Assembly (NCBI GenBank): GCA_023334545.1
Contig: JAADVB010000200.1
Span: forward strand, 1 to 36,328
Length of the DNA stretch: 36,328 bases
DNA from: Salisapilia sapeloensis CBS 127946
Lineage: Eukaryota > Protista > Oomycota
Direction: 5' to 3'
The notes beneath the pieces were generated by a model. The model did not search any database. It was not told the DNA's origin and worked only from the letters and a program-made list of their open reading frames with translations. The position numbers and the translations under genes are program-made. Below are positions 1-10,037 of the stretch, one piece after another (within the stretch, counting starts at the first letter, position 1; each line of letters begins with the position of its first letter).

Positions 1-46
1 CTTGTCGTGCACTTCGCCATAAACCAACTTGCCGATCGAAAGCAGC

Positions 47-943
47 ATGCTCGTCCTTCTCTTGTGCTGCACGCTCGTCTTGTCCCAGGTCACTTCCACA
101 AGTGTATCTTTCAAGGACCCGACTATGGATATCAACGCGACTGCATCGCAGCCAGTGATGAACCGTATAAACGGACCACCCGTAAGGGGCACAGGGCTGG
201 ACCGAGTTCCATATATTGCCAAAATCAAAAGCGGCCGCTGGAAGTGCTCTGGTGTACTCATCCGACCTCAGTGGGTCCTCACAGCTGCCCACTGTGTTAA
301 GAAAGCAAAGCAAACTGTAACTTTAATGAACTCTACGCACGAGGAAACCTTGGACAAGTGGAAAAGCGTCATCAGGCCGGAATATGATCCAAAAAAGAAA
401 AGCCCAAGAGGACATGATATCGGCTTGATCAAAGTGGACCAACCCAGTTGGTTTAATCCCATCGCATTGATGGCCAACTCGAAAAGTCGAACCCAGTCCA
501 CTGCCAAAGCGTATGGATTTGGCCAAGTGTTTAGATTGGATAAGTGGGTCAATTCTCCTCTGCTACGGGTGACTTGGTTCAAGCTTTCATCCAGAGACGC
601 AAAGGCTTGTGGAAAACGCAAGCCGAAAACTCTGATCTGTCCAGAAGTTGAGGTACGAAACGGCGGCGTTTGCAAGGGGGATTCTGGTGGTCCTCTTATT
701 GTCGAGGAGGACGTACCGAGGGTCTACGGCATCATTTCCGGAGGACGCAATTGCACGAAGCCGAAAAAGCAACGCCCAAACATTGAGCTAGTACCATATC
801 ACTACAACTGGATTGTAAGTACCATCAATTTGCATGACATGCAAGATGCAGAAATCGAGGCTGACAAGAGGAATCGCGCGAACAAACCAGCTTTGCCAAT
901 GCCGAGACCGATGCCTTATTGGCGCTTGCCTACGTACGTCTAG
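47..943 (+). CDS. Secreted S1 (chymotrypsin-fold) serine protease
   Basis: Hydrophobic signal peptide MLVLLLCCTLVLSQ from the ATG at 47 (the track start at 29 is a TTG). Intact triad motifs: CSGVLIRPQWVLTAAHC (His), DIGLIK (Asp), CKGDSGGPL (Ser). No introns needed. Confidence 0.92.
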   Translation: MLVLLLCCTLVLSQVTSTSVSFKDPTMDINATASQPVMNRINGPPVRGTGLDRVPYIAKIKSGRWKCSGVLIRPQWVLTAAHCVKKAKQTVTLMNSTHEETLDKWKSVIRPEYDPKKKSPRGHDIGLIKVDQPSWFNPIALMANSKSRTQSTAKAYGFGQVFRLDKWVNSPLLRVTWFKLSSRDAKACGKRKPKTLICPEVEVRNGGVCKGDSGGPLIVEEDVPRVYGIISGGRNCTKPKKQRPNIELVPYHYNWIVSTINLHDMQDAEIEADKRNRANKPALPMPRPMPYWRLPTYV

Positions 944-1434
944 CTATAAGATCTGTCTACTAAATTGCAACACATCGTATTTTGGACTTGAGTGGAAAAA
1001 GGAAGAGGAGGTGCCGACAGTGGTAACCTAGGCCAAAGTCTGAATCGTTGCTTTTGTTGCTCTTTCTTGTCGTACAATAAGTGGTGATCAGCATGTAGTG
1101 GAGACTAGAGTAAGTTACTTACTGAAAAGGACAATGATGATTAGCTAGATGGTAATTCGTCCACTGTTGGAACCTGCGTCTCTCAGCTTGAAAAGCCATC
1201 CACAAGATATGCGCTGCTTCCATGCCATTTCGATCGGATGCATAGTCGACTTATTTTTACAGTAAAAAGAAGCTACTGCATCCTGCCGTCACAAACCAAA
1301 AGACATACATGATCTACGCCAGTCTTCCCATGTACTTGTATATGCAATGCATTTCGTGTTCGTTTGTTTCTTATGCAAGTACGCCAAGAAATTATAAAGT
1401 CAAAGTACCATTCAAAAATGGTAGAACGTCTCGC

Positions 1435-4400
1435 TTACAGGTCATGCGACTCCGAATGCGCCAAGCTTTCTTCTTCGTGCACCGTCAGTGAGACGTTACC
1501 AGACTCCCTAGAGTCCATAAACGACGCAAACTCTTCTTCATCACTCGCGTCTTCGCCCAAGAGCTGAGCGTACTTTTCATCATCAAACTCTTCTTCCGCT
1601 TCCTCCAAGTCATCAATGTAGATGCCTCGTCTCGAAAGCGTCGAGAACGTGCCCAGCATCGACTGTCCCAAGCTCAGTTCACTCGTGCCTAAGCTCTTCT
1701 GACTACGCGTCGTCCCGGACAGAAAGCTTTGTGAGAGCCCAAAGGCTCTGGTCGACGTGTTTGCGTCGAAGTCACTACCAAAGCTACGCCTCCTTCGTCT
1801 CCCAGAGCCGCCTTGATCAGTTTGGATCGACAGGAAGGCCGGGTCGGACGTGGCGAGGAAGGATCCTCCGATGGTGCTCTGGGCATCTTCGTCCATGATT
1901 GGCGTCGAGCTAAGGAAGCTACTCGTAACGCTGCGGGAAGCATGCTGTCCTTCCTCATTGATATTCTGCACGTGATTCTTCACGGCACTCAAGAGCGATT
2001 CGAAGCTTCTTGGGAAACTGAGAAAGTCGTTCTTAATGAAGAAATGGAAGAACTGGGCGCGAGAGAGCGAGTACTGGAGATCCAATGGCAACTCCAGTTC
2101 GTCCGCCACCACCGGCAAGATCCGTTTGCCCTTGTCTTCAGCAAAAGCTAGCTGATCCTTTAGCAGCTCGCTCTTCAACGTCTTCCGACTGAGCACAAGT
2201 ACAAACATGGAGCACTTGAGGATGGCTTCCTTAGCTTCACGAATCCGATTGGACATGTCCTGATTACCTTGTTCTCCACTAGATAAAGCGGTCTCTGGTA
2301 TCGACTCGTGCGACTGGAGTTTATTCAGCTTCCTCCTTCGGTCGACATAGCACAAGACACCTGCCTGTCGACACAATTCCCCACACAGCTTTCGTACGAA
2401 AGACGCATGGCGATCACCATGTGCTATGAAGACGAACTGCTCTTTATTTGTCGGCAAGTCGGCGTACGAGATCATCGCTTGCTCTTGCTCCTCCGCCTTC
2501 ATCTTCCGTCGATTCGGAATCGACTCCCATTCTTGGACGCTACTTTCCTGCTCCGGCACACTTTCGACGCGATCGATCTTTGGACGATACCGAACGTACC
2601 CTTCATCATTCATGACGATACTGCCGCAGTTATGATCACTATTCGACTTGTCGCTTACTGCAGTCGAGTTCTTTCGCAAGTCGCCGGAAGATGTCGCAGT
2701 CGTTTGGGACGATACGTTGCTTCCAGAGCTCACGACAGTCCCTTGCTCGATACGTTTTAACTCTGGGACCAACTCATGATTCGAGCTGATGGAATCAGGT
2801 AGGAAGGATTGATTGTCTAGCACCGAGTTGGAATTCGGTACACGAGATCGTTTCTTTTCAATCTCATCCCGCAGTCCATCGAGCAACGTCCGGAGTTTAC
2901 TCTGATACTCTCCTTCATCATACGTATACCTCACGCCTCGGACATTCGCATGATGCTCCACACTCTTAATCGCACCTTCAAACGGAACGATCTGACGCGT
3001 GTACAAGTACACTTGCAGTTCCTCCGAGATCTCTGCGCCTTCTGTCGAAATTGCCAGGATAGGCGTACCTACTTGCTTGGCCATCGCCAGTTCATTCAGA
3101 CACCACTTGGATTGTTTATAGTCTTCCGTTAGGATACAAAGGACGACTGCAGCGTTCGAGATGCCTCGTGCAATCTCTTCTCGCCACACAGCTCCACCAC
3201 CAATGCCGTTCGGATCCATCAGATCTAACCACGTCGTGATGTTGGCAGCTTCCAGACTAGCCCGCAGCTTTTGTGCAAACTCCAAGTGCGAGTGCGTGTA
3301 GCTAATCATGACGTCTCGGTTCCCTGCCGCTCGTTTCAATTCGAACTGAAGACGAGTGGACGTCGTGCAGTCAATAGCACGCAGTCCTTCTTTATTCGTA
3401 CACATGATGTCGGCACCGGCGTCCAAGAGCGCCAAGGCTGTCTCCCGATCGTCTAGCTTGACAGCCAAGTGCAGTGCCGTGTCACCAGACGACTTGAGCT
3501 GATGATTCACTTTGCATCCGTGAGACGATAAGGCTTTGATCATCGCTGGTGTCGCGGCACCACTGCACGCAGCACATACGATCGGAGTCATGTCGCTATC
3601 GTCTACTAGATCTCCTTTCGCACCTTGCTCAAGCAGACTCGTGACTACTTCCAACTTGTTGACACGCGCGGCCCAGTGCAGTGGTGTACGTCCACGTGCG
3701 TCTCTCGCATCGACATTTGCACCAGCTTCCAACAACATATCCACAGCCTTGACGCTTCCATTCACAGCCGCCCAATGGAGTGGCGTTCGTTCGTTCAGAC
3801 CGACGTATCCGATCTCACCTAGACAGTCTGGCTCTACTTTCTTCCGAAGCAAGAGTCGAATGGCGTTCTCATCGTCCTTGGCAGCAGCAGAGTGCAATGG
3901 CGTCAAGGCAATGTCTCCTCCCCACTCTTCCAGGACTTGCGCAACGGCGTAGTTGCCTCGCAAATACGCCATCTGCAGCACTGTTACAGTGTTGGCATGC
4001 CCAGGGTCTGGAATCGCCAAGTGGTTCGCACCGGCTGCGAGTAGTTCACGCACGATTTCCGGATGATCTGCTAGGAAAATAGGTGGCAACTTGCTTTCAC
4101 TTCGGTAGGAAGACCGAGAGCAAGCGTTGACGTCTGCACCACGTGCCAAGAGCCATCGAACGGCGTCGAGTCTACCAGTAGACACGGCACAATGCAGTGG
4201 CGTGACGAGTGTCTGGCGCAGGACACTCGAATTGGACTCTTCCACCTCGACCACTGGCTTACAGACGAGTCGGGAGGCAAGGAACCAGAAGAGATCACCT
4301 GTGGAGACACGCAGACGAGATACTTTATCGAAACTATTGACGGACAGTCCGCAGTTATTCAGTAACTCGAGTGCTGCAAGGTTGCCTTGGTACGCTGCGA

Positions 4401-5853
4401 CGTGCATCGGGTTCTTGCGCGACCATGCGAAGAGACCAAAGACGAGCTTTGCGTCCGGATATAGTTCCCGAGCAAATTCTTCTCCGAGAGACTTGGTTGC
4501 TATGCGAAGACTTCGTTTGAGCAGACGCAAATCACCTAACTGTGCGCCACGGTACAATCGCTTGCGGATGTCGCTAACCACTTGACTCTTCGGGGGTGTC
4601 GCTTTATTCTTCGGCGCGAGGACGTTCGATTCGGACGGATCGTTCTTGGATTGCGCCCGCTGCTTCTTCCGTCGTGCTAGTTTGTTGCGTAGGATTAATC
4701 GACGGACGTCACCTGTCTGGTCAGACTCTTTAAACGCTCCTAACTGCATCTTTAGATGCTCTCGGAAGCGCATGAAGAAACGAATTTGGAGTAGCATGAG
4801 CAGTAGGACGATGGCTGCGCATGTAACGAAGATGTAAGCGTCGTTATGCTCGCCACAACCTTCCATCCATTTGCTGCCGGCGAGGAAGAAGATGAGACGA
4901 ATAGCTAACAATATGGTGAAGAGGAGGACGATGATGCCAGCGACTTCACATACTTGCAGGAACAATGTTCGCTTCACCTTTTGCAGTCGACCACTTGCAT
5001 CGATACGTCGCTCACGTTTAAAAGGTTCGAAGATGTGGAAACCGGAGGAAGGCAGACCGAGGATGATGACACAAGGAAGTAAGTGATAGATGATTGACCC
5101 TGCAGCAACCATCGATCGACAGCTCGTGGAAGACCAAGAGAAGAACATCCGACTCATTGGTTCGCCTACGTATCGAACTGCCTTGTGGTTTCCACTCGCA
5201 TCCTCCGGATCATCATCGAGGAAAGCTTCGTACTTGAGATGCGTGTAGAAATGAAATAAACCACAGATATCCATTGCGAGGAGCAAGACAGCGAGTGCAG
5301 ACAGACGCAAGGCAAAGTAGGAGTTCATCTTGAAACGCATGTGAAGATAGGACATGCGAGCTTTCTTCTCGAATTCGAGATCTCTCACGTCATCCGCTGG
5401 AAGGTCCGTGGACTTGTCGCTCGCGTCGTGGTGAAGGCGTCGACGAATGTGCACATTGGTAGCACGCACTCGAGCATCACTCGCATTGCGCGGCTCTGTT
5501 GTTGGCGATGGAAGGACATGATCGTCCCATGATACGGCATTCGGCTTGCGACGAGTTCCCATGGGATCCATGCGCGATGTAGTGCTAATTCGCTCTGTGA
5601 TCGAAGTTCGCCTCGAGTGATCCTGCATGGACCGACCTGAACTCTGTTGGCGCTGCTGCGTGCGCAGTATGGCCGCGTCCATCGTGAACACTCGCTGCGT
5701 CGTGTTGGGCGAATCGATGAATGATTCGTCATCGACGACGTCCGAGTCCATCGTATCTTGCGCCTGGACCCACTGGAGTGGTGTCTGCGCTCGGGTGTAT
5801 GGAGATGTGGTGTCGTCAAAGCTGTCCTTGGACATGCTTTGTCGCTCCCCCAT
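1435..5853 (-). CDS. Multi-pass membrane protein with ankyrin repeats and two TIR-like domains (4TM-ANK-TIR-TIR), 1472 aa
   Basis: Single uninterrupted ORF. Four hydrophobic segments (e.g. LSALAVLLLAMDICGLF, VAGIIVLLFTILLAIRLIFFLAG). Multiple ankyrin motifs (TPLHCAV, TPLHSAA, TPLHWAA twice, TALHLAV). TIR_2-like DVMISYTHSH...WLD...IARGISNAAVVLCILTEDYKQSKWCLNEL. A second TIR-like FVFIAHG...AILKCSMFVLVLSRKTLKSELLKDQL...ILPV. Confidence 0.9.
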   Translation of the reverse strand: MGERQSMSKDSFDDTTSPYTRAQTPLQWVQAQDTMDSDVVDDESFIDSPNTTQRVFTMDAAILRTQQRQQSSGRSMQDHSRRTSITERISTTSRMDPMGTRRKPNAVSWDDHVLPSPTTEPRNASDARVRATNVHIRRRLHHDASDKSTDLPADDVRDLEFEKKARMSYLHMRFKMNSYFALRLSALAVLLLAMDICGLFHFYTHLKYEAFLDDDPEDASGNHKAVRYVGEPMSRMFFSWSSTSCRSMVAAGSIIYHLLPCVIILGLPSSGFHIFEPFKRERRIDASGRLQKVKRTLFLQVCEVAGIIVLLFTILLAIRLIFFLAGSKWMEGCGEHNDAYIFVTCAAIVLLLMLLQIRFFMRFREHLKMQLGAFKESDQTGDVRRLILRNKLARRKKQRAQSKNDPSESNVLAPKNKATPPKSQVVSDIRKRLYRGAQLGDLRLLKRSLRIATKSLGEEFARELYPDAKLVFGLFAWSRKNPMHVAAYQGNLAALELLNNCGLSVNSFDKVSRLRVSTGDLFWFLASRLVCKPVVEVEESNSSVLRQTLVTPLHCAVSTGRLDAVRWLLARGADVNACSRSSYRSESKLPPIFLADHPEIVRELLAAGANHLAIPDPGHANTVTVLQMAYLRGNYAVAQVLEEWGGDIALTPLHSAAAKDDENAIRLLLRKKVEPDCLGEIGYVGLNERTPLHWAAVNGSVKAVDMLLEAGANVDARDARGRTPLHWAARVNKLEVVTSLLEQGAKGDLVDDSDMTPIVCAACSGAATPAMIKALSSHGCKVNHQLKSSGDTALHLAVKLDDRETALALLDAGADIMCTNKEGLRAIDCTTSTRLQFELKRAAGNRDVMISYTHSHLEFAQKLRASLEAANITTWLDLMDPNGIGGGAVWREEIARGISNAAVVLCILTEDYKQSKWCLNELAMAKQVGTPILAISTEGAEISEELQVYLYTRQIVPFEGAIKSVEHHANVRGVRYTYDEGEYQSKLRTLLDGLRDEIEKKRSRVPNSNSVLDNQSFLPDSISSNHELVPELKRIEQGTVVSSGSNVSSQTTATSSGDLRKNSTAVSDKSNSDHNCGSIVMNDEGYVRYRPKIDRVESVPEQESSVQEWESIPNRRKMKAEEQEQAMISYADLPTNKEQFVFIAHGDRHASFVRKLCGELCRQAGVLCYVDRRRKLNKLQSHESIPETALSSGEQGNQDMSNRIREAKEAILKCSMFVLVLSRKTLKSELLKDQLAFAEDKGKRILPVVADELELPLDLQYSLSRAQFFHFFIKNDFLSFPRSFESLLSAVKNHVQNINEEGQHASRSVTSSFLSSTPIMDEDAQSTIGGSFLATSDPAFLSIQTDQGGSGRRRRRSFGSDFDANTSTRAFGLSQSFLSGTTRSQKSLGTSELSLGQSMLGTFSTLSRRGIYIDDLEEAEEEFDDEKYAQLLGEDASDEEEFASFMDSRESGNVSLTVHEEESLAHSESHDL

Positions 5854-6501
5854 CTACGTTTAGAGGTACGGAGTGACAGGCGAGACTGCTGGAATGCTTA
5901 GGTGAATTTTTCGGACGAGTGGCTTGATGCAATTTTCTCAGCTTCTGTAAGTAGAGTACGTAGGCGCAGTAGTTTCGACTCGCCGTCTCGAGTGATAAGA
6001 GGCAGTGGCGTGCTAAAGCAGGAGCTCGGTTCGTACTGTGCTGTCTAGTGATCGTAATGCTGGTCAGAAAACCAGCTGCATGCGGCTATAGAAAATGATC
6101 ACGCAAAAGGGGAAAGGGGATTGTTTTCTGGACACTAATGGCCGTGGTGCTAGCGTTTCGATACGAGATAGTGACAAATGGAGCATGTTTGTCGTGCGGT
6201 GTACATGCAGTTTAGTAGTGCAGCATTGCATGTGTAGAGCTCATGAGGCTCGAGCAAGTAGAGTCTACGGTGGAGAAAAATCGACGCGATCTGAGGTCGG
6301 AACAGACGTCTAGAGAAAATACAGTGATGGGTACATTGGGAGAGATCCATCGTACAGCTTCTCGGCGGACAGTGGATTGTACCCTTCCTCTCGCCATGGG
6401 TCTGAGATCCGTGGTAATTTAAACCAGAAACTAGCATCAGCCACGGGCTGGATGTTTGAAACGTTCAAATGCATATTGAAATACGAGTGGAAATCTAGCT
6501 C

Positions 6502-7872
6502 CTACACTTCGCGCTCCTGCGGTCGATTCTCATAAGCTTCTCGAGCGTGTACGATCGGACTATCTGAAGCGCTGCCGTCTTCATAACGATGGTACTTGTT
6601 CCAACTTTTAGCCCGACATCGATAGTACACACATCCACCGATGATCGCGACGAAAGCGACGATCGGAACAATGATGGCAGCTATCTTGCCACCGGACAAA
6701 CCGTTTGGCGAGCATGCATAGTATTCTGTACCGAGGATGGCATTTAAACTACCTTCGGGACACTCATACGCATTGTCCAACCATGGCGTAGGGAGAGAGA
6801 CGTTCACATACTCGAGCGAAGAGAGCATAGAGTAGCCTAAAATTCGATTTTCAAGTGGATTTCCACTGAGATTTCTATGTCATATAAAGGTTACATTTTT
6901 TCATCACGAATAAATCATGCACACGTACAATAGGTGAAGGTACTCAGTAGCTGCGATCGCTTGAGGAATTTTGTCCAATCTATTCTCTTGGAGATGGCTA
7001 CAGCACACGTACATAGCGTTAGGTTGGCTCACATGGTAGTTTCCATATAGTTAGCCGCACATGTTGATAGCTTCGTTCAGCTCCAAATCATCAGGAAGGT
7101 CTTGTAGATCGTTATGACTCAAATCCCTAAACATGGAGATTAGATCGCGTTACGGCACGTTTCTCTAGTCGATACGCACAGTGTCTCCACTCCATACAAG
7201 TAATCGCCTTCTGGGATTGACGAAAGGTGGCAGAAACTGATGTTAATCGTCGCGTTTTTGAGAGGAGAGGGTAGAGCATTTAGATCTGGTGGGCTGGACA
7301 AGTTCAGTCCATATAGCGTTAAAGCCTTTAGCTCCGTTGGTGACGACATTGTCTTGCTGGTGATCTCAATGTACTTGGTATCTGCATCCTTCGCAACATC
7401 GCAGTCATCCCCGCAAATTCGCCTAGGCCTAACGTTAGCAAAATTGCTACTATGCTCGCATATGACATTACCATTCTCGTACATGGTCTGGGACTCGAAC
7501 GTCGATTTTATCGACATGTTCCGCTTTAATCGATGGATGCTTAACCTCCGTTCCATTCTCAGTTGGATGAGATAAAATGACCAACGTTGCACTCTCGTCC
7601 GAACCGAAGATATTCATGCATTGGACTCTGCAGTTGGACTCTGAATCGCTCCTCCAACAGCCTTCGTTACTAGAGGAATTATCTGCTTCTTCACAATCAT
7701 TGCTTTCACCACCATCCGTCCAAATGCCATCTCGGAAGATACAAGCGTCATGATTGTCACAATACTCGCCACAGTCTGTAGTGAGGATCTTTGTCTCCAT
7801 CTCACAAGCCATGGTTCTCCATAGACCCAACGCAGTTACAACACAAAGAAAGAAATGATGGCAAATACCCAT
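6502..7872 (-). CDS. Cys-rich/LRR single-pass receptor-like protein without kinase, 5 exons (7872-7472, 7428-7180, 7126-7061, 6997-6929, 6874-6502), 385 aa
   Basis: Manual splice model: four GT-AG introns (43, 53, 63, 54 nt), all phase 2, join into one open frame. Signal peptide MGICHHFFLCVVTALGLW, Cys-rich N-terminus, LRR-like LDLSHNDLQDLP / IHLQENRLDKIP / LNLSGNPLEN, TM IAAIIVPIVAFVAIIGGCVYY, then a short tail. Confidence 0.8.
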
Positions 7873-8078: not shown

Positions 8079-10037
8079 ATGGAAGAATCAGCTAACCGTA
8101 GCGAACACATTCCGTCGGAGGCACTCAAGGTATGCCGGATGTCACCTGTGTATTTCCCCTTTTCTGAGCTCCTTTTGGATGCACGTAGGCGTTGCAAGGG
8201 CCAAACCCAACGACGACACGAGGCGCCCCGTCCGTCTTGGGCGTCCACCCGAAAGAGCCCAAGGTCATCTACTGCAGCGGCAAGACCGTGGTGGTGCGCA
8301 ACCTAGAGGATCCAACAGACACATTCGTCTACAAGGGTCACAAGGACCAGACGACGGCGGCCAAGTTTTCTCCGAATGGCTTCTGGGTCGCTTCCGGCGA
8401 TATCACTGGCAAAGTCCGTGTCTGGTACGCTTCCGTCCTTCCTGTCATCAATGCTTCTATGCTAACTTGTCTGCAGGTCATATGACAACCCAGAGCACAA
8501 CCTCAAGCTGGAAATGCTGGTCTTCTCCGGGGAGATCAAGGACTTGTGTTGGGATCCGGACAGCAAGCGCATCGTGGCGGTGGGCGACGGGCGATCGTTC
8601 ATGGCCCGTGTCTTCATGTGGGACTCTGGCAATAGCGTCGGTGAGATCGTCGGCCACCAGAAACGCATTCTGAGCGTCGACTACCGCCCCGTGCGTCCGT
8701 TCCGGATCATGACGGCCAGCGAGGACTTTAACGTGTGCGTCTTCGAAGGACCTCCGTTCAAGTTCAAGCAGAACAACATGAACCTGCACTCGAACTTTGT
8801 CAACTGCATTCGATATTCGCCCGACGGAGAGCTCGCCATCAGCGTCGGGTCCGACAAGCTCATGTGTCTCTACGACGGCAAAAGTGGCGACTTGCTGGAA
8901 ACGTTCCCAGCGGAGCACGCGAGCTCTATCTACGCCGTGTGCTGGAGTCCGGACGGGAAGCAGGTGCTCACGTCGTCGGCGGACAAAACGGTCAAGCTCT
9001 GGGACGTCGAGAGTCGGAGCGTGACGACGACCTTCACGTTCGGAGACGGCAGCAAACTGTCGGACATGCAGGTCGGCGTCGTCTGGGTGCAAGACTACAT
9101 GGTGTCTCTCAGCCTTGGAGGCGACTTGAACTACCTCGACACGGCCAACCCGACACAGCCGAAGAAGGTCGTGCAGGCTCACCAGGTGGCAATTCAAGCC
9201 ATGGCTGCTGCACCAGACAGGAACATGATCTTCACCGGCAGCTACGATGGCAATGTGTGTGCGTGGGACAACGAGACTAAGGTCGCGACCAAGCTCACGG
9301 GCTCGGTGCACACGGCGAAGCTGACTTCGATCGCTGCCGACGCATCGCAGGTGGCCAGTGTCGGTTGGGACGACACCGCCCGCTTCGCCCCTGACGCCGG
9401 TTCCTACAGCAGCGACTGCAAGTTGGAGGCCCAGCCATACGATATTGCTCTCGGTCCAGAAGGCTCGGACATCGTTGCCATCGCGACGAACAAGGGCGTC
9501 AAGCTCCTTCGCGGCGGGAGCATCGTGTTCGAGACGGGTGAGCTGGAGTGGACGCCCAATTGCATCTCGATGAACTCTTCCGGGGATTTGCTGGCTGTCG
9601 GAGCGCAGGAGGGGAACAAGATCCATCTCTTCCAGGTGGATGGCGATAGTCTCTCGGAGACAGGCGCGATCGAAGGACATTTGGGCGCGCCCACGACCGT
9701 CTCGTTCTCTCCTGACGGCACGCTGCTGGCAGCCGGAGACGCCTACCGAGAAGTTCGCGTGTGGGACGTGGCTAGTCGCAGCGCCAAGGTGCAGGGTCTC
9801 TGGGTCTTCCACTCTACGCGCGTGACGAGCGTCGCGTGGGCTCCGAGTGGGAACTTTGTGGCGAGCGGATCGCTCGACGAACGCGTCTACGTCTGGAACG
9901 TGGAGAAGCCCATGTCGAAGAAGTGCTTTGACTTTGCCCACAAGGATGGCGTGACAGGCGTGCGTTTCACGAGCGAAGAAGAGCTTGTGTCCGTGGGCAA
10001 TGACGGATGCGTCTGCTACTGGGACGTGACCAAGTAG
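8079..10037 (+). CDS. WDR1: Actin-interacting protein 1 (WD40 repeat, WDR1/AIP1), exons 8079-8129, 8189-8424, 8477-10037, 615 aa
   Basis: AIP1-typical motifs FSPNGFWVASGDITGKVRVW, VFMWDSGNSVGEIVGH, RPFRIMTASEDF and FEGPPFKFK. Many WD40 repeats. Two GT-AG introns (59 and 52 nt) restore the frame. The first exon is less certain. Confidence 0.93.

What the first reader, a model, noticed from the sequence alone, without database searches (positions are those of the whole stretch)
1435..5853. Membrane-anchored ankyrin protein with one catalytic-looking TIR and one E-to-Q pseudo-TIR
Seen: 4 TM helices, an ankyrin stack, then two TIR-like domains separated by a disordered linker. TIR1 has the canonical SxWCxxEL motif (SKWCLNEL; Glu codon at 3091-3093). 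TIR2 has SELLKDQL at the aligned position (Gln codon at 2152-2154). Established: the TIR alpha-C glutamate is the catalytic residue of TIR NADases (SARM1, plant TIR-NLRs, bacterial Thoeris ThsB). Inference: this is a membrane sensor in which ankyrins regulate an NAD+-cleaving TIR and the dead second TIR acts as a scaffold, inhibitor or product-binding module. That would be an immune or stress signalling architecture little characterised in oomycete-like organisms.
Basis: partly seen in the sequence, partly recalled or inferred. Interest (0 to 1): 0.82.

Follow-up and report, generated by a model that had tools for sequence, protein, structure and literature searches.

The report
Membrane ankyrin protein with paired TIRs
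This expressed oomycete gene encodes a four-pass membrane protein with ankyrin repeats and two TIR domains, one carrying every sequence mark of an NAD+-cleaving enzyme and one that has lost the catalytic residue across the whole family; nobody has tested what the family does.

Summary
The ORF at 1435-5853 (minus strand, 1472 aa) has four hydrophobic helices, an ankyrin region and two Pfam TIR_2 domains. Glu921 lies at 3091-3093 and Gln1234 at 2152-2154. RNA-run contigs indicate one unspliced mRNA of about 4.7 kb.

The gene belongs to an oomycete-wide family with several paralogues. In 119 of 119 homologues TIR1 keeps the Glu, and in 120 of 120 TIR2 has Gln at the aligned position. Among more distant representatives, TIR2 has Gln in 49 of 63, another non-Glu residue in 13, and Glu in 1. 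TIR2 folds as a TIR with the Gln on helix alpha-C. It has its own invariant motifs, so it is constrained rather than decayed.

My best reading (confidence about 0.55): TIR1 is a regulated NAD+-cleaving enzyme and TIR2 is a non-catalytic partner in the same chain. The closest analogue is the plant RPS4/RRS1 TIR pair, which works between two proteins. The strong conservation and one-to-one orthology argue against a fast-evolving pathogen receptor. The neighbouring genes are not conserved partners, and the database name "TRP Ca2+ channel" is unsupported.

No paper in the library characterises the family. The scan also noted a second paralogue elsewhere in this genome. No enzyme activity has been shown.

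The parts
1340..6060 (-). Approximate transcript: an unspliced mRNA of about 4.7 kb
   Evidence: In three RNA-labelled runs a single colinear contig spans 1378-6067, 1344-6057 or 1339-6043. There are no joints. Depth is zero in the flanking intergenic DNA and differs from the neighbouring genes.
1435..5853 (-). Coding sequence, 1472 aa plus stop
5359..5853 (-). N-terminal region (residues 1-165), low complexity, poorly conserved, predicted cytosolic
   Evidence: Composition is rich in D, R, S and T. Column identity to homologues is about 0.1.
4699..5358 (-). Four-helix membrane domain (residues 166-385). TM1 184-202, TM2 247-270, TM3 298-326, TM4 339-360.
   Evidence: Hydropathy. Invariant motifs NSYF, LGLPxSGxRxFEPFxRE and QKVKRTxFLQxCE in alignment A3. 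No Pfam or PDB relative.
4711..4773 (-). Juxtamembrane motif directly after TM4 (residues 361-381), the most conserved stretch outside TIR1
   Evidence: 83% mean identity over 109 homologues. F, R, F, R, E, H, M, L, G, A, F, E, D, Q, T and G are invariant in A3.
3340..4581 (-). Ankyrin-repeat region with a helical lead-in (residues 425-838)
   Evidence: Pfam Ank, Ank_2, Ank_3, Ank_4 and Ank_5, E down to about 4e-41. Well conserved.
2854..3321 (-). TIR1 (residues 845-1000), the catalytic-type TIR
   Evidence: Pfam TIR_2 71.8 bits, TIR 29.6 bits, ThsB_TIR 21.7 bits. Aligns to the Cat1 TIR including the G-rich BB loop and WCxxEL. pLDDT is mostly above 85 in the tandem model.
3091..3093 (-). Codon GAA for Glu921, the putative catalytic glutamate on helix alpha-C of TIR1
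   Evidence: Invariant in 119 of 119 homologues and 66 of 66 family representatives.
2443..2853 (-). Ser-rich disordered linker between the TIRs (residues 1001-1137), long only in this orthologue clade
   Evidence: pLDDT below 50. Mostly gaps in the paralogues.
2584..2622 (-). Conserved short motif in the linker (residues 1078-1090), predicted as a beta-hairpin
   Evidence: S-I-V/I-hydrophobic ... G-Y-Y/V is conserved in all 15 clade-A sequences. Strands at 239-242 and 247-251 of the tandem model, pLDDT about 78.
1978..2442 (-). TIR2 (residues 1138-1292), the glutamate-less TIR
   Evidence: Pfam TIR_2 37.5 bits. AlphaFold2 pLDDT 83.9. Foldseek matches to SARM1, MyD88 and SPARTA TIR domains.
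2152..2154 (-). Codon CAG for Gln1234, at the position of the catalytic Glu on helix alpha-C of TIR2
   Evidence: Gln in 120 of 120 homologues and 49 of 63 representatives.
2257..2340 (-). Low-complexity insertion in the BB loop of TIR2 (about residues 1172-1199), specific to this orthologue clade
   Evidence: Alignment A1, columns 62-112. pLDDT 51-66.
1438..1977 (-). Ser- and acid-rich C-terminal tail (residues 1293-1472)
   Evidence: Composition. Weak conservation limited to clade A.
1624..1686 (-). Conserved tail motif (residues 1390-1410, S-x-x-S-L-x-Q-S-M-x-G-x-F-S), preceded by an Arg run and followed by an acidic run
   Evidence: Clade-A alignment.

Best explanation
The gene encodes the 'long' (clade A) member of an oomycete family of polytopic membrane proteins. 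The layout is a cytosolic N-terminus, four membrane helices, then a cytosolic ankyrin stack, TIR1, a linker, TIR2 and a tail.

TIR1 is most likely a regulated NAD(P)+ glycohydrolase or cyclase of the SARM1 / plant TIR / bacterial ThsB kind. TIR2 is a conserved non-catalytic TIR that pairs with TIR1 in the same chain. It would template or restrain the TIR-TIR contacts that enzymatic TIRs need to form an active site, much as the Glu-less RRS1 TIR does for RPS4 between two chains. It may also bind a nucleotide in its conserved Gln pocket.

The ankyrin stack and the conserved four-helix domain would supply localisation and the activating input.

Shown here: the architecture, transcription, the fold of both TIRs, the Glu/Gln positions and their conservation.

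Inferred: NAD+ cleavage, the TIR1-TIR2 pairing, the membrane topology and the physiological role.
For: Hallmarks of enzymatic TIRs. PMC13732033 names these as the catalytic Glu plus Asp and Gly residues in the BB loop.
- TIR1 keeps all of them invariantly: S-x-W-C-x-x-E-L, and D-x-M-D-P-x-G-I-G-G-G.
- TIR1 aligns through these motifs to the Cat1 TIR.
- TIR2 lacks all of them. It has Gln for Glu, Leu for Trp, and no conserved BB-loop Gly. It is nevertheless a confident TIR fold.
- TIR2 has its own invariant residues on the betaA-alphaA loop, on alpha-C and after it.

The asymmetry is specific to this family.
- TIR1 has Glu in 119 of 119 homologues and 66 of 66 representatives.
- TIR2 has non-Glu in 120 of 120 homologues and 62 of 63 representatives.
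- In bacterial multi-TIR arrays that hit the same profile, 72 of 84 second-position TIRs have Glu.

Other support.
- The tandem AlphaFold2 model has pTM 0.70 although 22% of it is disordered. This is only suggestive of a defined TIR1-TIR2 arrangement.
- The gene is transcribed and under purifying selection.
- The orthologue clade is well supported.
Against: - No enzymatic assay exists for any family member in the searched literature.
- A conserved Glu does not guarantee activity. Dictyostelium TirB and TirD keep the Glu yet showed no NAD+ processing in vitro (bioRxiv 10.64898/2026.04.30.722052).
- I could not read model coordinates or the predicted aligned error, so the TIR1-TIR2 contact is not demonstrated.
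- TIR2's BB loop carries a long disordered insertion in this clade. That fits poorly with the idea that TIR2 donates its BB loop to TIR1.
- In this window's protein the residue before the Glu is Asn, where 118 of 119 homologues have Lys.
Confidence: 0.55

Rival explanations
1. Non-enzymatic adaptor. Both TIRs act only as protein-protein assembly modules, as in animal TLR/MyD88 signalling. They would recruit unknown partners to a membrane, and the Glu would be kept for structural reasons.
For: - MyD88 and MAL TIR filaments are among the structural matches.
- Some Glu-bearing eukaryotic TIRs are inactive in vitro.
- TIR2 shows that the family tolerates a Glu-less TIR.
Against: - The Glu, the Trp four residues before it and the G-rich BB loop are kept together without exception in TIR1 over the whole family.
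- The paired TIR2 lost all three together, which is what relaxing a catalytic constraint would produce.
- TIR1 matches bacterial-type TIR_2 and ThsB models better than the animal TIR model.
Confidence: 0.2
2. Self-contained messenger system. TIR1 makes an NAD+-derived nucleotide. TIR2's Gln pocket binds it (or NAD+) without cleaving it. This gates the conserved four-helix membrane domain as a channel or transporter.
For: - TIR2's invariant residues lie in the elements that form the nucleotide pocket in enzymatic TIRs: the betaA-alphaA loop HGDxH and D-Q on alpha-C.
- The membrane domain and the juxtamembrane motif are as conserved as an enzyme core.
- Glu-to-Gln variants of related N-glycosidase folds are used to trap ligands. 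One example, 8pqq, appeared among the fold matches.
Against: - There is no homology of the membrane domain to any channel.
- Four helices per chain would need oligomerisation to form a pore.
- There is no evidence of ligand binding.
- Relatives in Cyanophora have the Ank-TIR-TIR module without the membrane domain.
Confidence: 0.12
3. Pathogen- or virus-sensing immune receptor. It would work with the neighbouring LRR receptor-like gene and the secreted protease as a split Toll-like module. This was proposed by another first-stage note on 47-7872.
For: - TIR domains are immune modules in animals, plants and bacteria.
- A trypsin-like protease gene (29-943) and a putative LRR gene (6502-7872) flank the gene.
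Against: - In Pythium oligandrum and Plasmopara halstedii the orthologue is flanked by a UDP-glycosyltransferase gene, other Ank-TIR paralogues and a cullin gene, not by LRR or protease genes.
- None of those conserved neighbours is in the window.
- Each neighbour is a separate transcript with a different depth.
- The ectodomain is only a loop of about 45 residues.
- Strong conservation and one-to-one orthology are unlike arms-race receptors.
Confidence: 0.06
4. TRP-type Ca2+ channel, as several database records name homologues ('transient receptor potential Ca2 channel (TRP-CC) family protein').
For: Names given by sources for Plasmopara, Globisporangium, Achlya and Thraustotheca homologues. 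Ankyrin repeats are shared with TRPA/TRPV-type channels.
Against: - No ion-transport or TRP Pfam domain is found, even at E up to 10.
- There are four rather than six helices.
- The ankyrins follow the membrane helices rather than preceding them.
- The membrane-domain profile has no PDB channel match.
Confidence: 0.03

Closest known systems
Arabidopsis RPS4/RRS1 paired TIR-NLRs (PDB 4c6t heterodimer; PMC13732033)
   Same: A TIR with the catalytic Glu and BB-loop motif is paired with a TIR that lacks both. The Glu-less partner is conserved and regulatory.
   Different: Here the pair is in one polypeptide rather than two. There are no NB-ARC or LRR domains. The protein is membrane-anchored with ankyrin repeats. 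The pairing interface is not known.
SARM1 / TIR-1 (ARM-SAM-SAM-TIR NADase)
   Same: A highly conserved eukaryotic protein in which a helical-repeat domain precedes an enzymatic-type TIR. SARM1 TIR is the top structural match of TIR2 and among the matches of the tandem model.
   Different: Ankyrin rather than ARM repeats. No SAM oligomerisation domains. Two TIRs. A polytopic membrane anchor. No evidence of an allosteric NMN/NAD+ site.
Bacterial TIR_2 / ThsB / Cat1 (CRISPR-associated TIR 1) enzymes
   Same: This is the best sequence match of both TIR1 and the TIR2 profile in the PDB (E 1.3e-4 and 7.5e-4). It shares the G-rich BB loop and the WCxxEL motif with TIR1. PADLOC ThsB models hit weakly.
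   Different: The bacterial proteins are soluble defence proteins with other sensor domains. Bacterial multi-TIR arrays keep the Glu in successive TIRs.
Oomycete 'uncharacterized ankyrin repeat-TIR proteins' noted by Lapin, Johanndrees and Parker 2022 (PMC9153377)
   Same: This is that family.
   Different: The review notes only the ankyrin-TIR architecture. The text searched does not mention the four-helix anchor, the second TIR or the invariant Glu/Gln asymmetry.
Ank-TIR-TIR proteins of Cyanophora paradoxa and one MMETSP transcriptome
   Same: The same ankyrin, Glu-bearing TIR, Glu-less TIR module. TIR1 motif is SEWCR(K/R)E(L/V). At the TIR2 position the MMETSP protein has Gln and the scored Cyanophora proteins have Arg or Ala.
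   Different: No N-terminal four-helix membrane cluster. One carries LRR_6 repeats instead.

Membership tests
TIR domain superfamily (Pfam TIR_2, PF13676) | Match to the family HMM above its gathering score | tested here: met
   TIR1 scores 71.8 bits and TIR2 37.5 bits, against a cut-off of 28.
TIR domain superfamily (Pfam TIR_2, PF13676) | Flavodoxin-like alpha/beta fold with alternating strands and helices | tested here: met
   AlphaFold2 models have betaA-alphaA-betaB-alphaB-betaC-alphaC-betaD-alphaD-alphaE for both domains. Foldseek probability is 1.0 to solved TIR domains.
Enzymatic (NAD+-cleaving) TIRs: SARM1, plant TIRs, ThsB, AbTir | Catalytic glutamate on helix alpha-C | tested here: met
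   This row is for TIR1. Glu921 aligns to the Glu of Cat1 and is invariant.
Enzymatic (NAD+-cleaving) TIRs: SARM1, plant TIRs, ThsB, AbTir | Catalytic glutamate on helix alpha-C (TIR2) | tested here: not met
   Gln1234 is at the aligned position. Across the family, 62 of 63 representatives and 120 of 120 closer homologues have a non-Glu residue there.
Enzymatic (NAD+-cleaving) TIRs: SARM1, plant TIRs, ThsB, AbTir | Conserved Asp and Gly residues in the BB loop (named as required in PMC13732033) | tested here: met
   Met for TIR1 only, which has D-x-M-D-P-x-G-I-G-G-G invariant. TIR2 has no conserved Gly and a variable-length insertion there.
Enzymatic (NAD+-cleaving) TIRs: SARM1, plant TIRs, ThsB, AbTir | Oligomerisation-dependent NAD+ cleavage measured in vitro or in cells | not testable with these tools
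SARM1 family | ARM-repeat autoinhibitory domain and tandem SAM oligomerisation domains | tested here: not met
   Pfam finds ankyrin repeats only, with no ARM or SAM domain.
TRP-CC cation channels (the name some sources give to homologues) | Six-helix ion-transport domain with a pore loop, and ankyrins N-terminal to it | tested here: not met
   No ion-channel Pfam hit at E up to 10. Four helices. The ankyrins are C-terminal to the helices. No PDB channel match to the membrane-domain profile.
Toll-like / IL-1 receptors | Single-pass membrane protein with an LRR or Ig ectodomain and one cytosolic TIR of the animal (PF01582) type | tested here: not met
   Four helices and the longest outward loop is about 45 residues. 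No LRR or Ig domain. TIR_2 scores far above the animal TIR model.
Paired catalytic / non-catalytic TIRs (RPS4/RRS1 type) | One TIR with Glu and BB-loop motif plus a partner TIR lacking both | tested here: met
   Here both TIRs are in one chain.
Paired catalytic / non-catalytic TIRs (RPS4/RRS1 type) | Direct TIR-TIR heterodimer, and NB-ARC-LRR receptor context | tested here: inconclusive
   NB-ARC and LRR domains are absent.

The most novel reading that the evidence does not exclude
The protein is a self-contained second-messenger device. TIR1 makes an NAD+-derived nucleotide at a membrane. The Gln pocket of TIR2 is a non-hydrolysing receptor for that product or for NAD+. Occupancy of that pocket is relayed through the invariant juxtamembrane motif to a new four-helix channel or transporter domain. 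That would be a TIR pseudoenzyme acting as a nucleotide sensor, and a new membrane effector class in oomycete pathogens.
Probability: 0.12. Interest if true: 0.85.

Novelty: new variant of a known kind. Interest (0 to 1): 0.6.

Why it matters
Enzymatic TIR domains are central to cell-death and immune signalling in bacteria, plants and animals. Most eukaryotic TIR clades outside the model organisms remain untested (bioRxiv 10.64898/2026.04.30.722052).

This family offers a naturally fused pair of a catalytic-type TIR and a Glu-less TIR. The pair is kept across oomycetes and occurs, without the membrane anchor, in a glaucophyte. It is a simple system for asking what a non-catalytic TIR partner does: template, brake or ligand sensor. 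That question is currently being worked out for plant paired NLRs.

The family is present in every oomycete genome sampled here, including major crop and animal pathogens. It has several conserved paralogues and no close animal or plant counterpart. Its physiological role is therefore worth knowing, whether that is NAD+ or calcium signalling, zoospore biology or regulated cell death.

If TIR1 turns out to be inactive, the finding reduces to a conserved adaptor of unknown function.

Tried and rejected
- TRP-channel reading from database names: rejected. There is no channel domain.
- Split Toll-like module with the neighbouring LRR and protease genes: not supported. Synteny in two other oomycetes shows different neighbours, and none of those conserved neighbours is in the window.
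- Single-sequence search of TIR2 against PDB sequences: no hit. A family profile was needed.
- ESM Atlas look-up of the membrane domain: only scores of 0.78 or less, which is chance level, and no structure search was possible.
- Profile of the membrane domain against PDB sequences: nothing meaningful.
- Looking for the Glu/Gln pairing in bacterial tandem-TIR arrays that hit the tandem profile: they keep Glu in both positions, so they are not the same module.
- Foldseek of the tandem model against AlphaFold DB clusters: this finds many tandem-TIR proteins in animals and bacteria. TM by query is mostly 0.2-0.35, so no shared two-domain geometry can be claimed.
- Model coordinates are not exposed to scripts. 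The TIR1-TIR2 interface and a map of conserved residues on the surface could not be computed.
- Literature searches by architecture, by NADase terms and by locus tags of homologues: no characterisation found.

Full report
**What is there.** The minus strand of the window carries one uninterrupted ORF from 5853 down to 1435. It encodes 1472 aa and starts at the first ATG after an upstream stop.

Contigs of three runs labelled as RNA, from the same organism, each cover the gene as one colinear piece: 1378-6067, 1344-6057 and 1339-6043. There are no joints. Depth is zero in the flanking intergenic DNA and differs from both neighbouring genes. I read this as an unspliced mRNA of about 4.7 kb. The caveat is that the run type is itself a guess by the tool.

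A run from a related organism holds fragments that are 90-97% identical. Of the 40 listed differences, 35 fall on third codon positions and 32 are synonymous. The gene is therefore under purifying selection.

**Architecture.**
- Hydropathy finds four membrane-length segments at about residues 184-202, 247-270, 298-326 and 339-360.
- Pfam finds ankyrin repeats over about residues 480-830 and TIR_2 twice. TIR1 (residues 848-940) scores 71.8 bits and TIR2 (about residues 1141-1273) scores 37.5 bits, against a gathering score of 28.
- The N-terminal 165 residues, the 137-residue linker between the TIRs and the 180-residue tail are Ser-, Asp- and Glu-rich and poorly conserved.
- The loop between helices 2 and 3 and the stretch after helix 4 are rich in Arg and Lys. 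By the positive-inside rule this places both termini, the ankyrins and both TIRs in the cytosol. This topology is inferred, not shown.

**The two key residues.** SKWCLNEL and SELLKDQL each occur once.

Three independent routes show that the Gln occupies the catalytic-Glu position:
- A profile of 38 TIR2 sequences aligned to PDB sequences puts D-Q-L on the D-E-L of Cat1, AT1G72930 and RPP1.
- Profile-profile alignment of TIR1 against TIR2 gives probability 95.3 and E 2e-8 over 141 columns. It pairs Glu with Gln, Trp with Leu and Cys with Val.
- In the AlphaFold2 model of TIR2 (pLDDT 83.9) the Gln lies on the helix that follows strand C, which is alpha-C.

The TIR2 model matches the solved TIR domains of SARM1, MyD88 and SPARTA at Foldseek probability 1.0. 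The second domain is therefore a real TIR fold.

**Family.** A search restricted to the two-TIR region found more than 200 proteins. Every named hit is an oomycete: Phytophthora, Peronospora, Plasmopara, Bremia, Pythium, Globisporangium, Lagenidium, Albugo, Aphanomyces, Saprolegnia, Achlya and Thraustotheca. Each genome has several paralogues. All of them have the same order of membrane region, ankyrins, TIR1 and TIR2.

A tree places the window's protein on a long branch as sister to the 'long' orthologues (about 1450-1650 aa) of Pythiales and Peronosporales, with SH-aLRT 100. Albugo candida holds the same kind of position in a second paralogue clade. The organism is therefore an oomycete outside Pythiales and Peronosporales. 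I did not identify it further.

An exhaustive profile search found 105 cluster representatives at E of 1e-30 or better. Outside oomycetes, the ankyrin, Glu-TIR, Glu-less-TIR module occurs in several Cyanophora paradoxa proteins and in one marine transcriptome. None of these has the four-helix cluster.

**Conservation of the asymmetry.**
- Top 120 homologues: TIR1's Ser, Trp, Cys, Glu and Leu are invariant (119 of 119). TIR2's Asp-Gln-Leu-Ala is invariant (120 of 120 aligned).
- More divergent 50%-identity representatives: TIR1 has Glu in 66 of 66. TIR2 has Gln in 49, another non-Glu residue in 13, and Glu in 1 of 63.
- Bacterial giant multi-TIR proteins hit the same tandem profile (for example from Candidatus Parabeggiatoa and a Bacteroidota MAG). 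They have Glu in 72 of 84 second-position TIRs. The asymmetry is therefore a property of this eukaryotic family and not of tandem TIRs in general.

TIR1 is extremely conserved, at about 75% identity between this protein and Phytophthora. Its BB loop D-x-M-D-P-x-G-I-G-G-G is invariant.

TIR2 lacks the Trp, the Glu and any conserved BB-loop Gly. In this clade it even carries a disordered insertion there. It nevertheless has its own invariant residues: H-G-D-x-H after strand A, D-Q-L-A-F-A-E-D-K on and after alpha-C, Y-S-L-S-R and H-F. That is the signature of a selected non-catalytic function, not of decay.

**Other conserved parts.** The membrane domain has invariant motifs. These are NSYF before helix 1, L-G-L-P-x-S-G-x-R-x-F-E-P-F-x-R-E after helix 2, and Q-K-V-K-R-T-x-F-L-Q-x-C-E entering helix 3.

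The stretch directly after helix 4 (residues 361-381) is 83% identical across 109 homologues. It is the most conserved stretch outside TIR1.

The membrane domain has no Pfam family, no PDB relative by profile and no informative Atlas neighbour.

Specific to the long clade are three short motifs:
- a motif in the linker predicted as a beta-hairpin (residues 1078-1090);
- an Arg run in the tail;
- a tail motif (residues 1390-1410) followed by an acidic run.

**Mechanism.** According to PMC13732033, all enzymatic TIRs need the catalytic Glu and the BB-loop Asp and Gly, and they become active through TIR-TIR association. In the RPS4/RRS1 pair only RPS4 has these features, while the Glu-less RRS1 TIR is a conserved partner.

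The protein here shows the same division of labour in one chain. I therefore commit to the following, at about 0.55 overall:
- TIR1 is a regulated NAD(P)+-cleaving enzyme.
- TIR2 is its non-catalytic partner in cis.
- The ankyrin and membrane parts provide the input and the location.

The tandem model's pTM of 0.70, despite 22% disorder, hints at a defined TIR1-TIR2 arrangement. I could not read coordinates or the predicted aligned error.

Against the main reading: no member has been assayed. A conserved Glu does not guarantee activity, because Dictyostelium TirB and TirD kept it and were inactive in vitro.

**Rivals.**
- A purely adaptor role (0.2).
- TIR2 as a nucleotide sensor gating the membrane domain (0.12). 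This is also the most novel reading the evidence does not exclude.
- A pathogen-sensing module working with the neighbouring LRR and protease genes (0.06).
- A TRP-type channel, as database names suggest (0.03).

The pathogen-sensing and TRP-channel readings were tested and are not supported:
- Orthologues in Pythium oligandrum and Plasmopara halstedii sit between a UDP-glycosyltransferase gene, further Ank-TIR paralogues and a cullin gene.
- None of those neighbours is in the window.
- No channel domain is detectable.

**Novelty.** A 2022 review notes 'uncharacterized ankyrin repeat-TIR proteins' in some oomycetes (PMC9153377). A 2026 preprint states that several wholly eukaryotic TIR clades are uncharacterised.

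None of my searches found the four-helix anchor, the second TIR or the invariant Glu/Gln asymmetry described anywhere, or any experiment on the family. The library lacks most subscription journals, so this absence is not proof.

I rate the finding a new variant of a known kind. It is an enzymatic-type TIR system with a built-in Glu-less TIR partner on a new membrane anchor. Interest is 0.6: the architecture is clean, ancient and testable, but the function is still inferred.

The scan holds a first-reader note of a second membrane-anchored ankyrin-TIR-TIR gene on another piece of this genome. That fits the multi-paralogue family.

Noticed in passing
window 29-943 (+): A trypsin-family serine protease gene (Pfam Trypsin, E 5e-30) lies downstream of the TIR gene. 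It has a separate transcript at several-fold higher assembler depth (480-700 against 35-74).
   Followed up: partly
window 8514-10037 (+): A 507-aa ORF made of WD40 repeats (Pfam WD40, E 9.5e-59), apparently two beta-propellers. It overlaps a 487-aa ORF on the opposite strand that is probably spurious.
   Followed up: partly
L001:16063-20787 and L002:252-4988; also L002:19354-23052: In Pythium oligandrum and Plasmopara halstedii the orthologue lies in a conserved cluster. The cluster holds one or two further Ank-TIR paralogues (about 1575 aa and 1232 aa), a UDP-glycosyltransferase gene and a cullin gene. This cluster is absent from the window.
   Followed up: partly
P0155, P0162, P0176, P0194, P0228 (bacterial proteins from the representative search): Giant bacterial proteins (for example Candidatus Parabeggiatoa and a Bacteroidota MAG, 1200-2300 aa) carry three to six TIR domains in tandem. 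Almost all have the S-x-Y-C-x-x-E motif. Their function is unknown.
   Followed up: partly
P0177, P0179, P0187, P0202, P0203, P0209 (Cyanophora paradoxa); P0156 (MMETSP transcriptome): The glaucophyte Cyanophora paradoxa has a small gene family with the same module of ankyrins, a Glu-bearing TIR and a Glu-less TIR, but no membrane helices. The MMETSP protein adds LRR_6 repeats. This patchy distribution could reflect ancient inheritance or gene transfer.
   Followed up: partly
P0072, P0118, P0121 (Lagenidium giganteum and a MetaClust protein): Some family members are predicted as proteins of 2200-2660 aa. They are fused to EF-hand/calmodulin-type domains, or they carry two TIR1-TIR2 modules. 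These could be real fusions hinting at a calcium link, or merged gene models.
   Followed up: no
window 3094-3096 and 3106-3108 (residues 920 and 916): In this protein the residue before the catalytic Glu is Asn, where 118 of 119 homologues have Lys. The residue after the Ser is Lys, where 111 of 119 have Glu. These are lineage-specific changes next to the putative active site, on a long branch.
   Followed up: no
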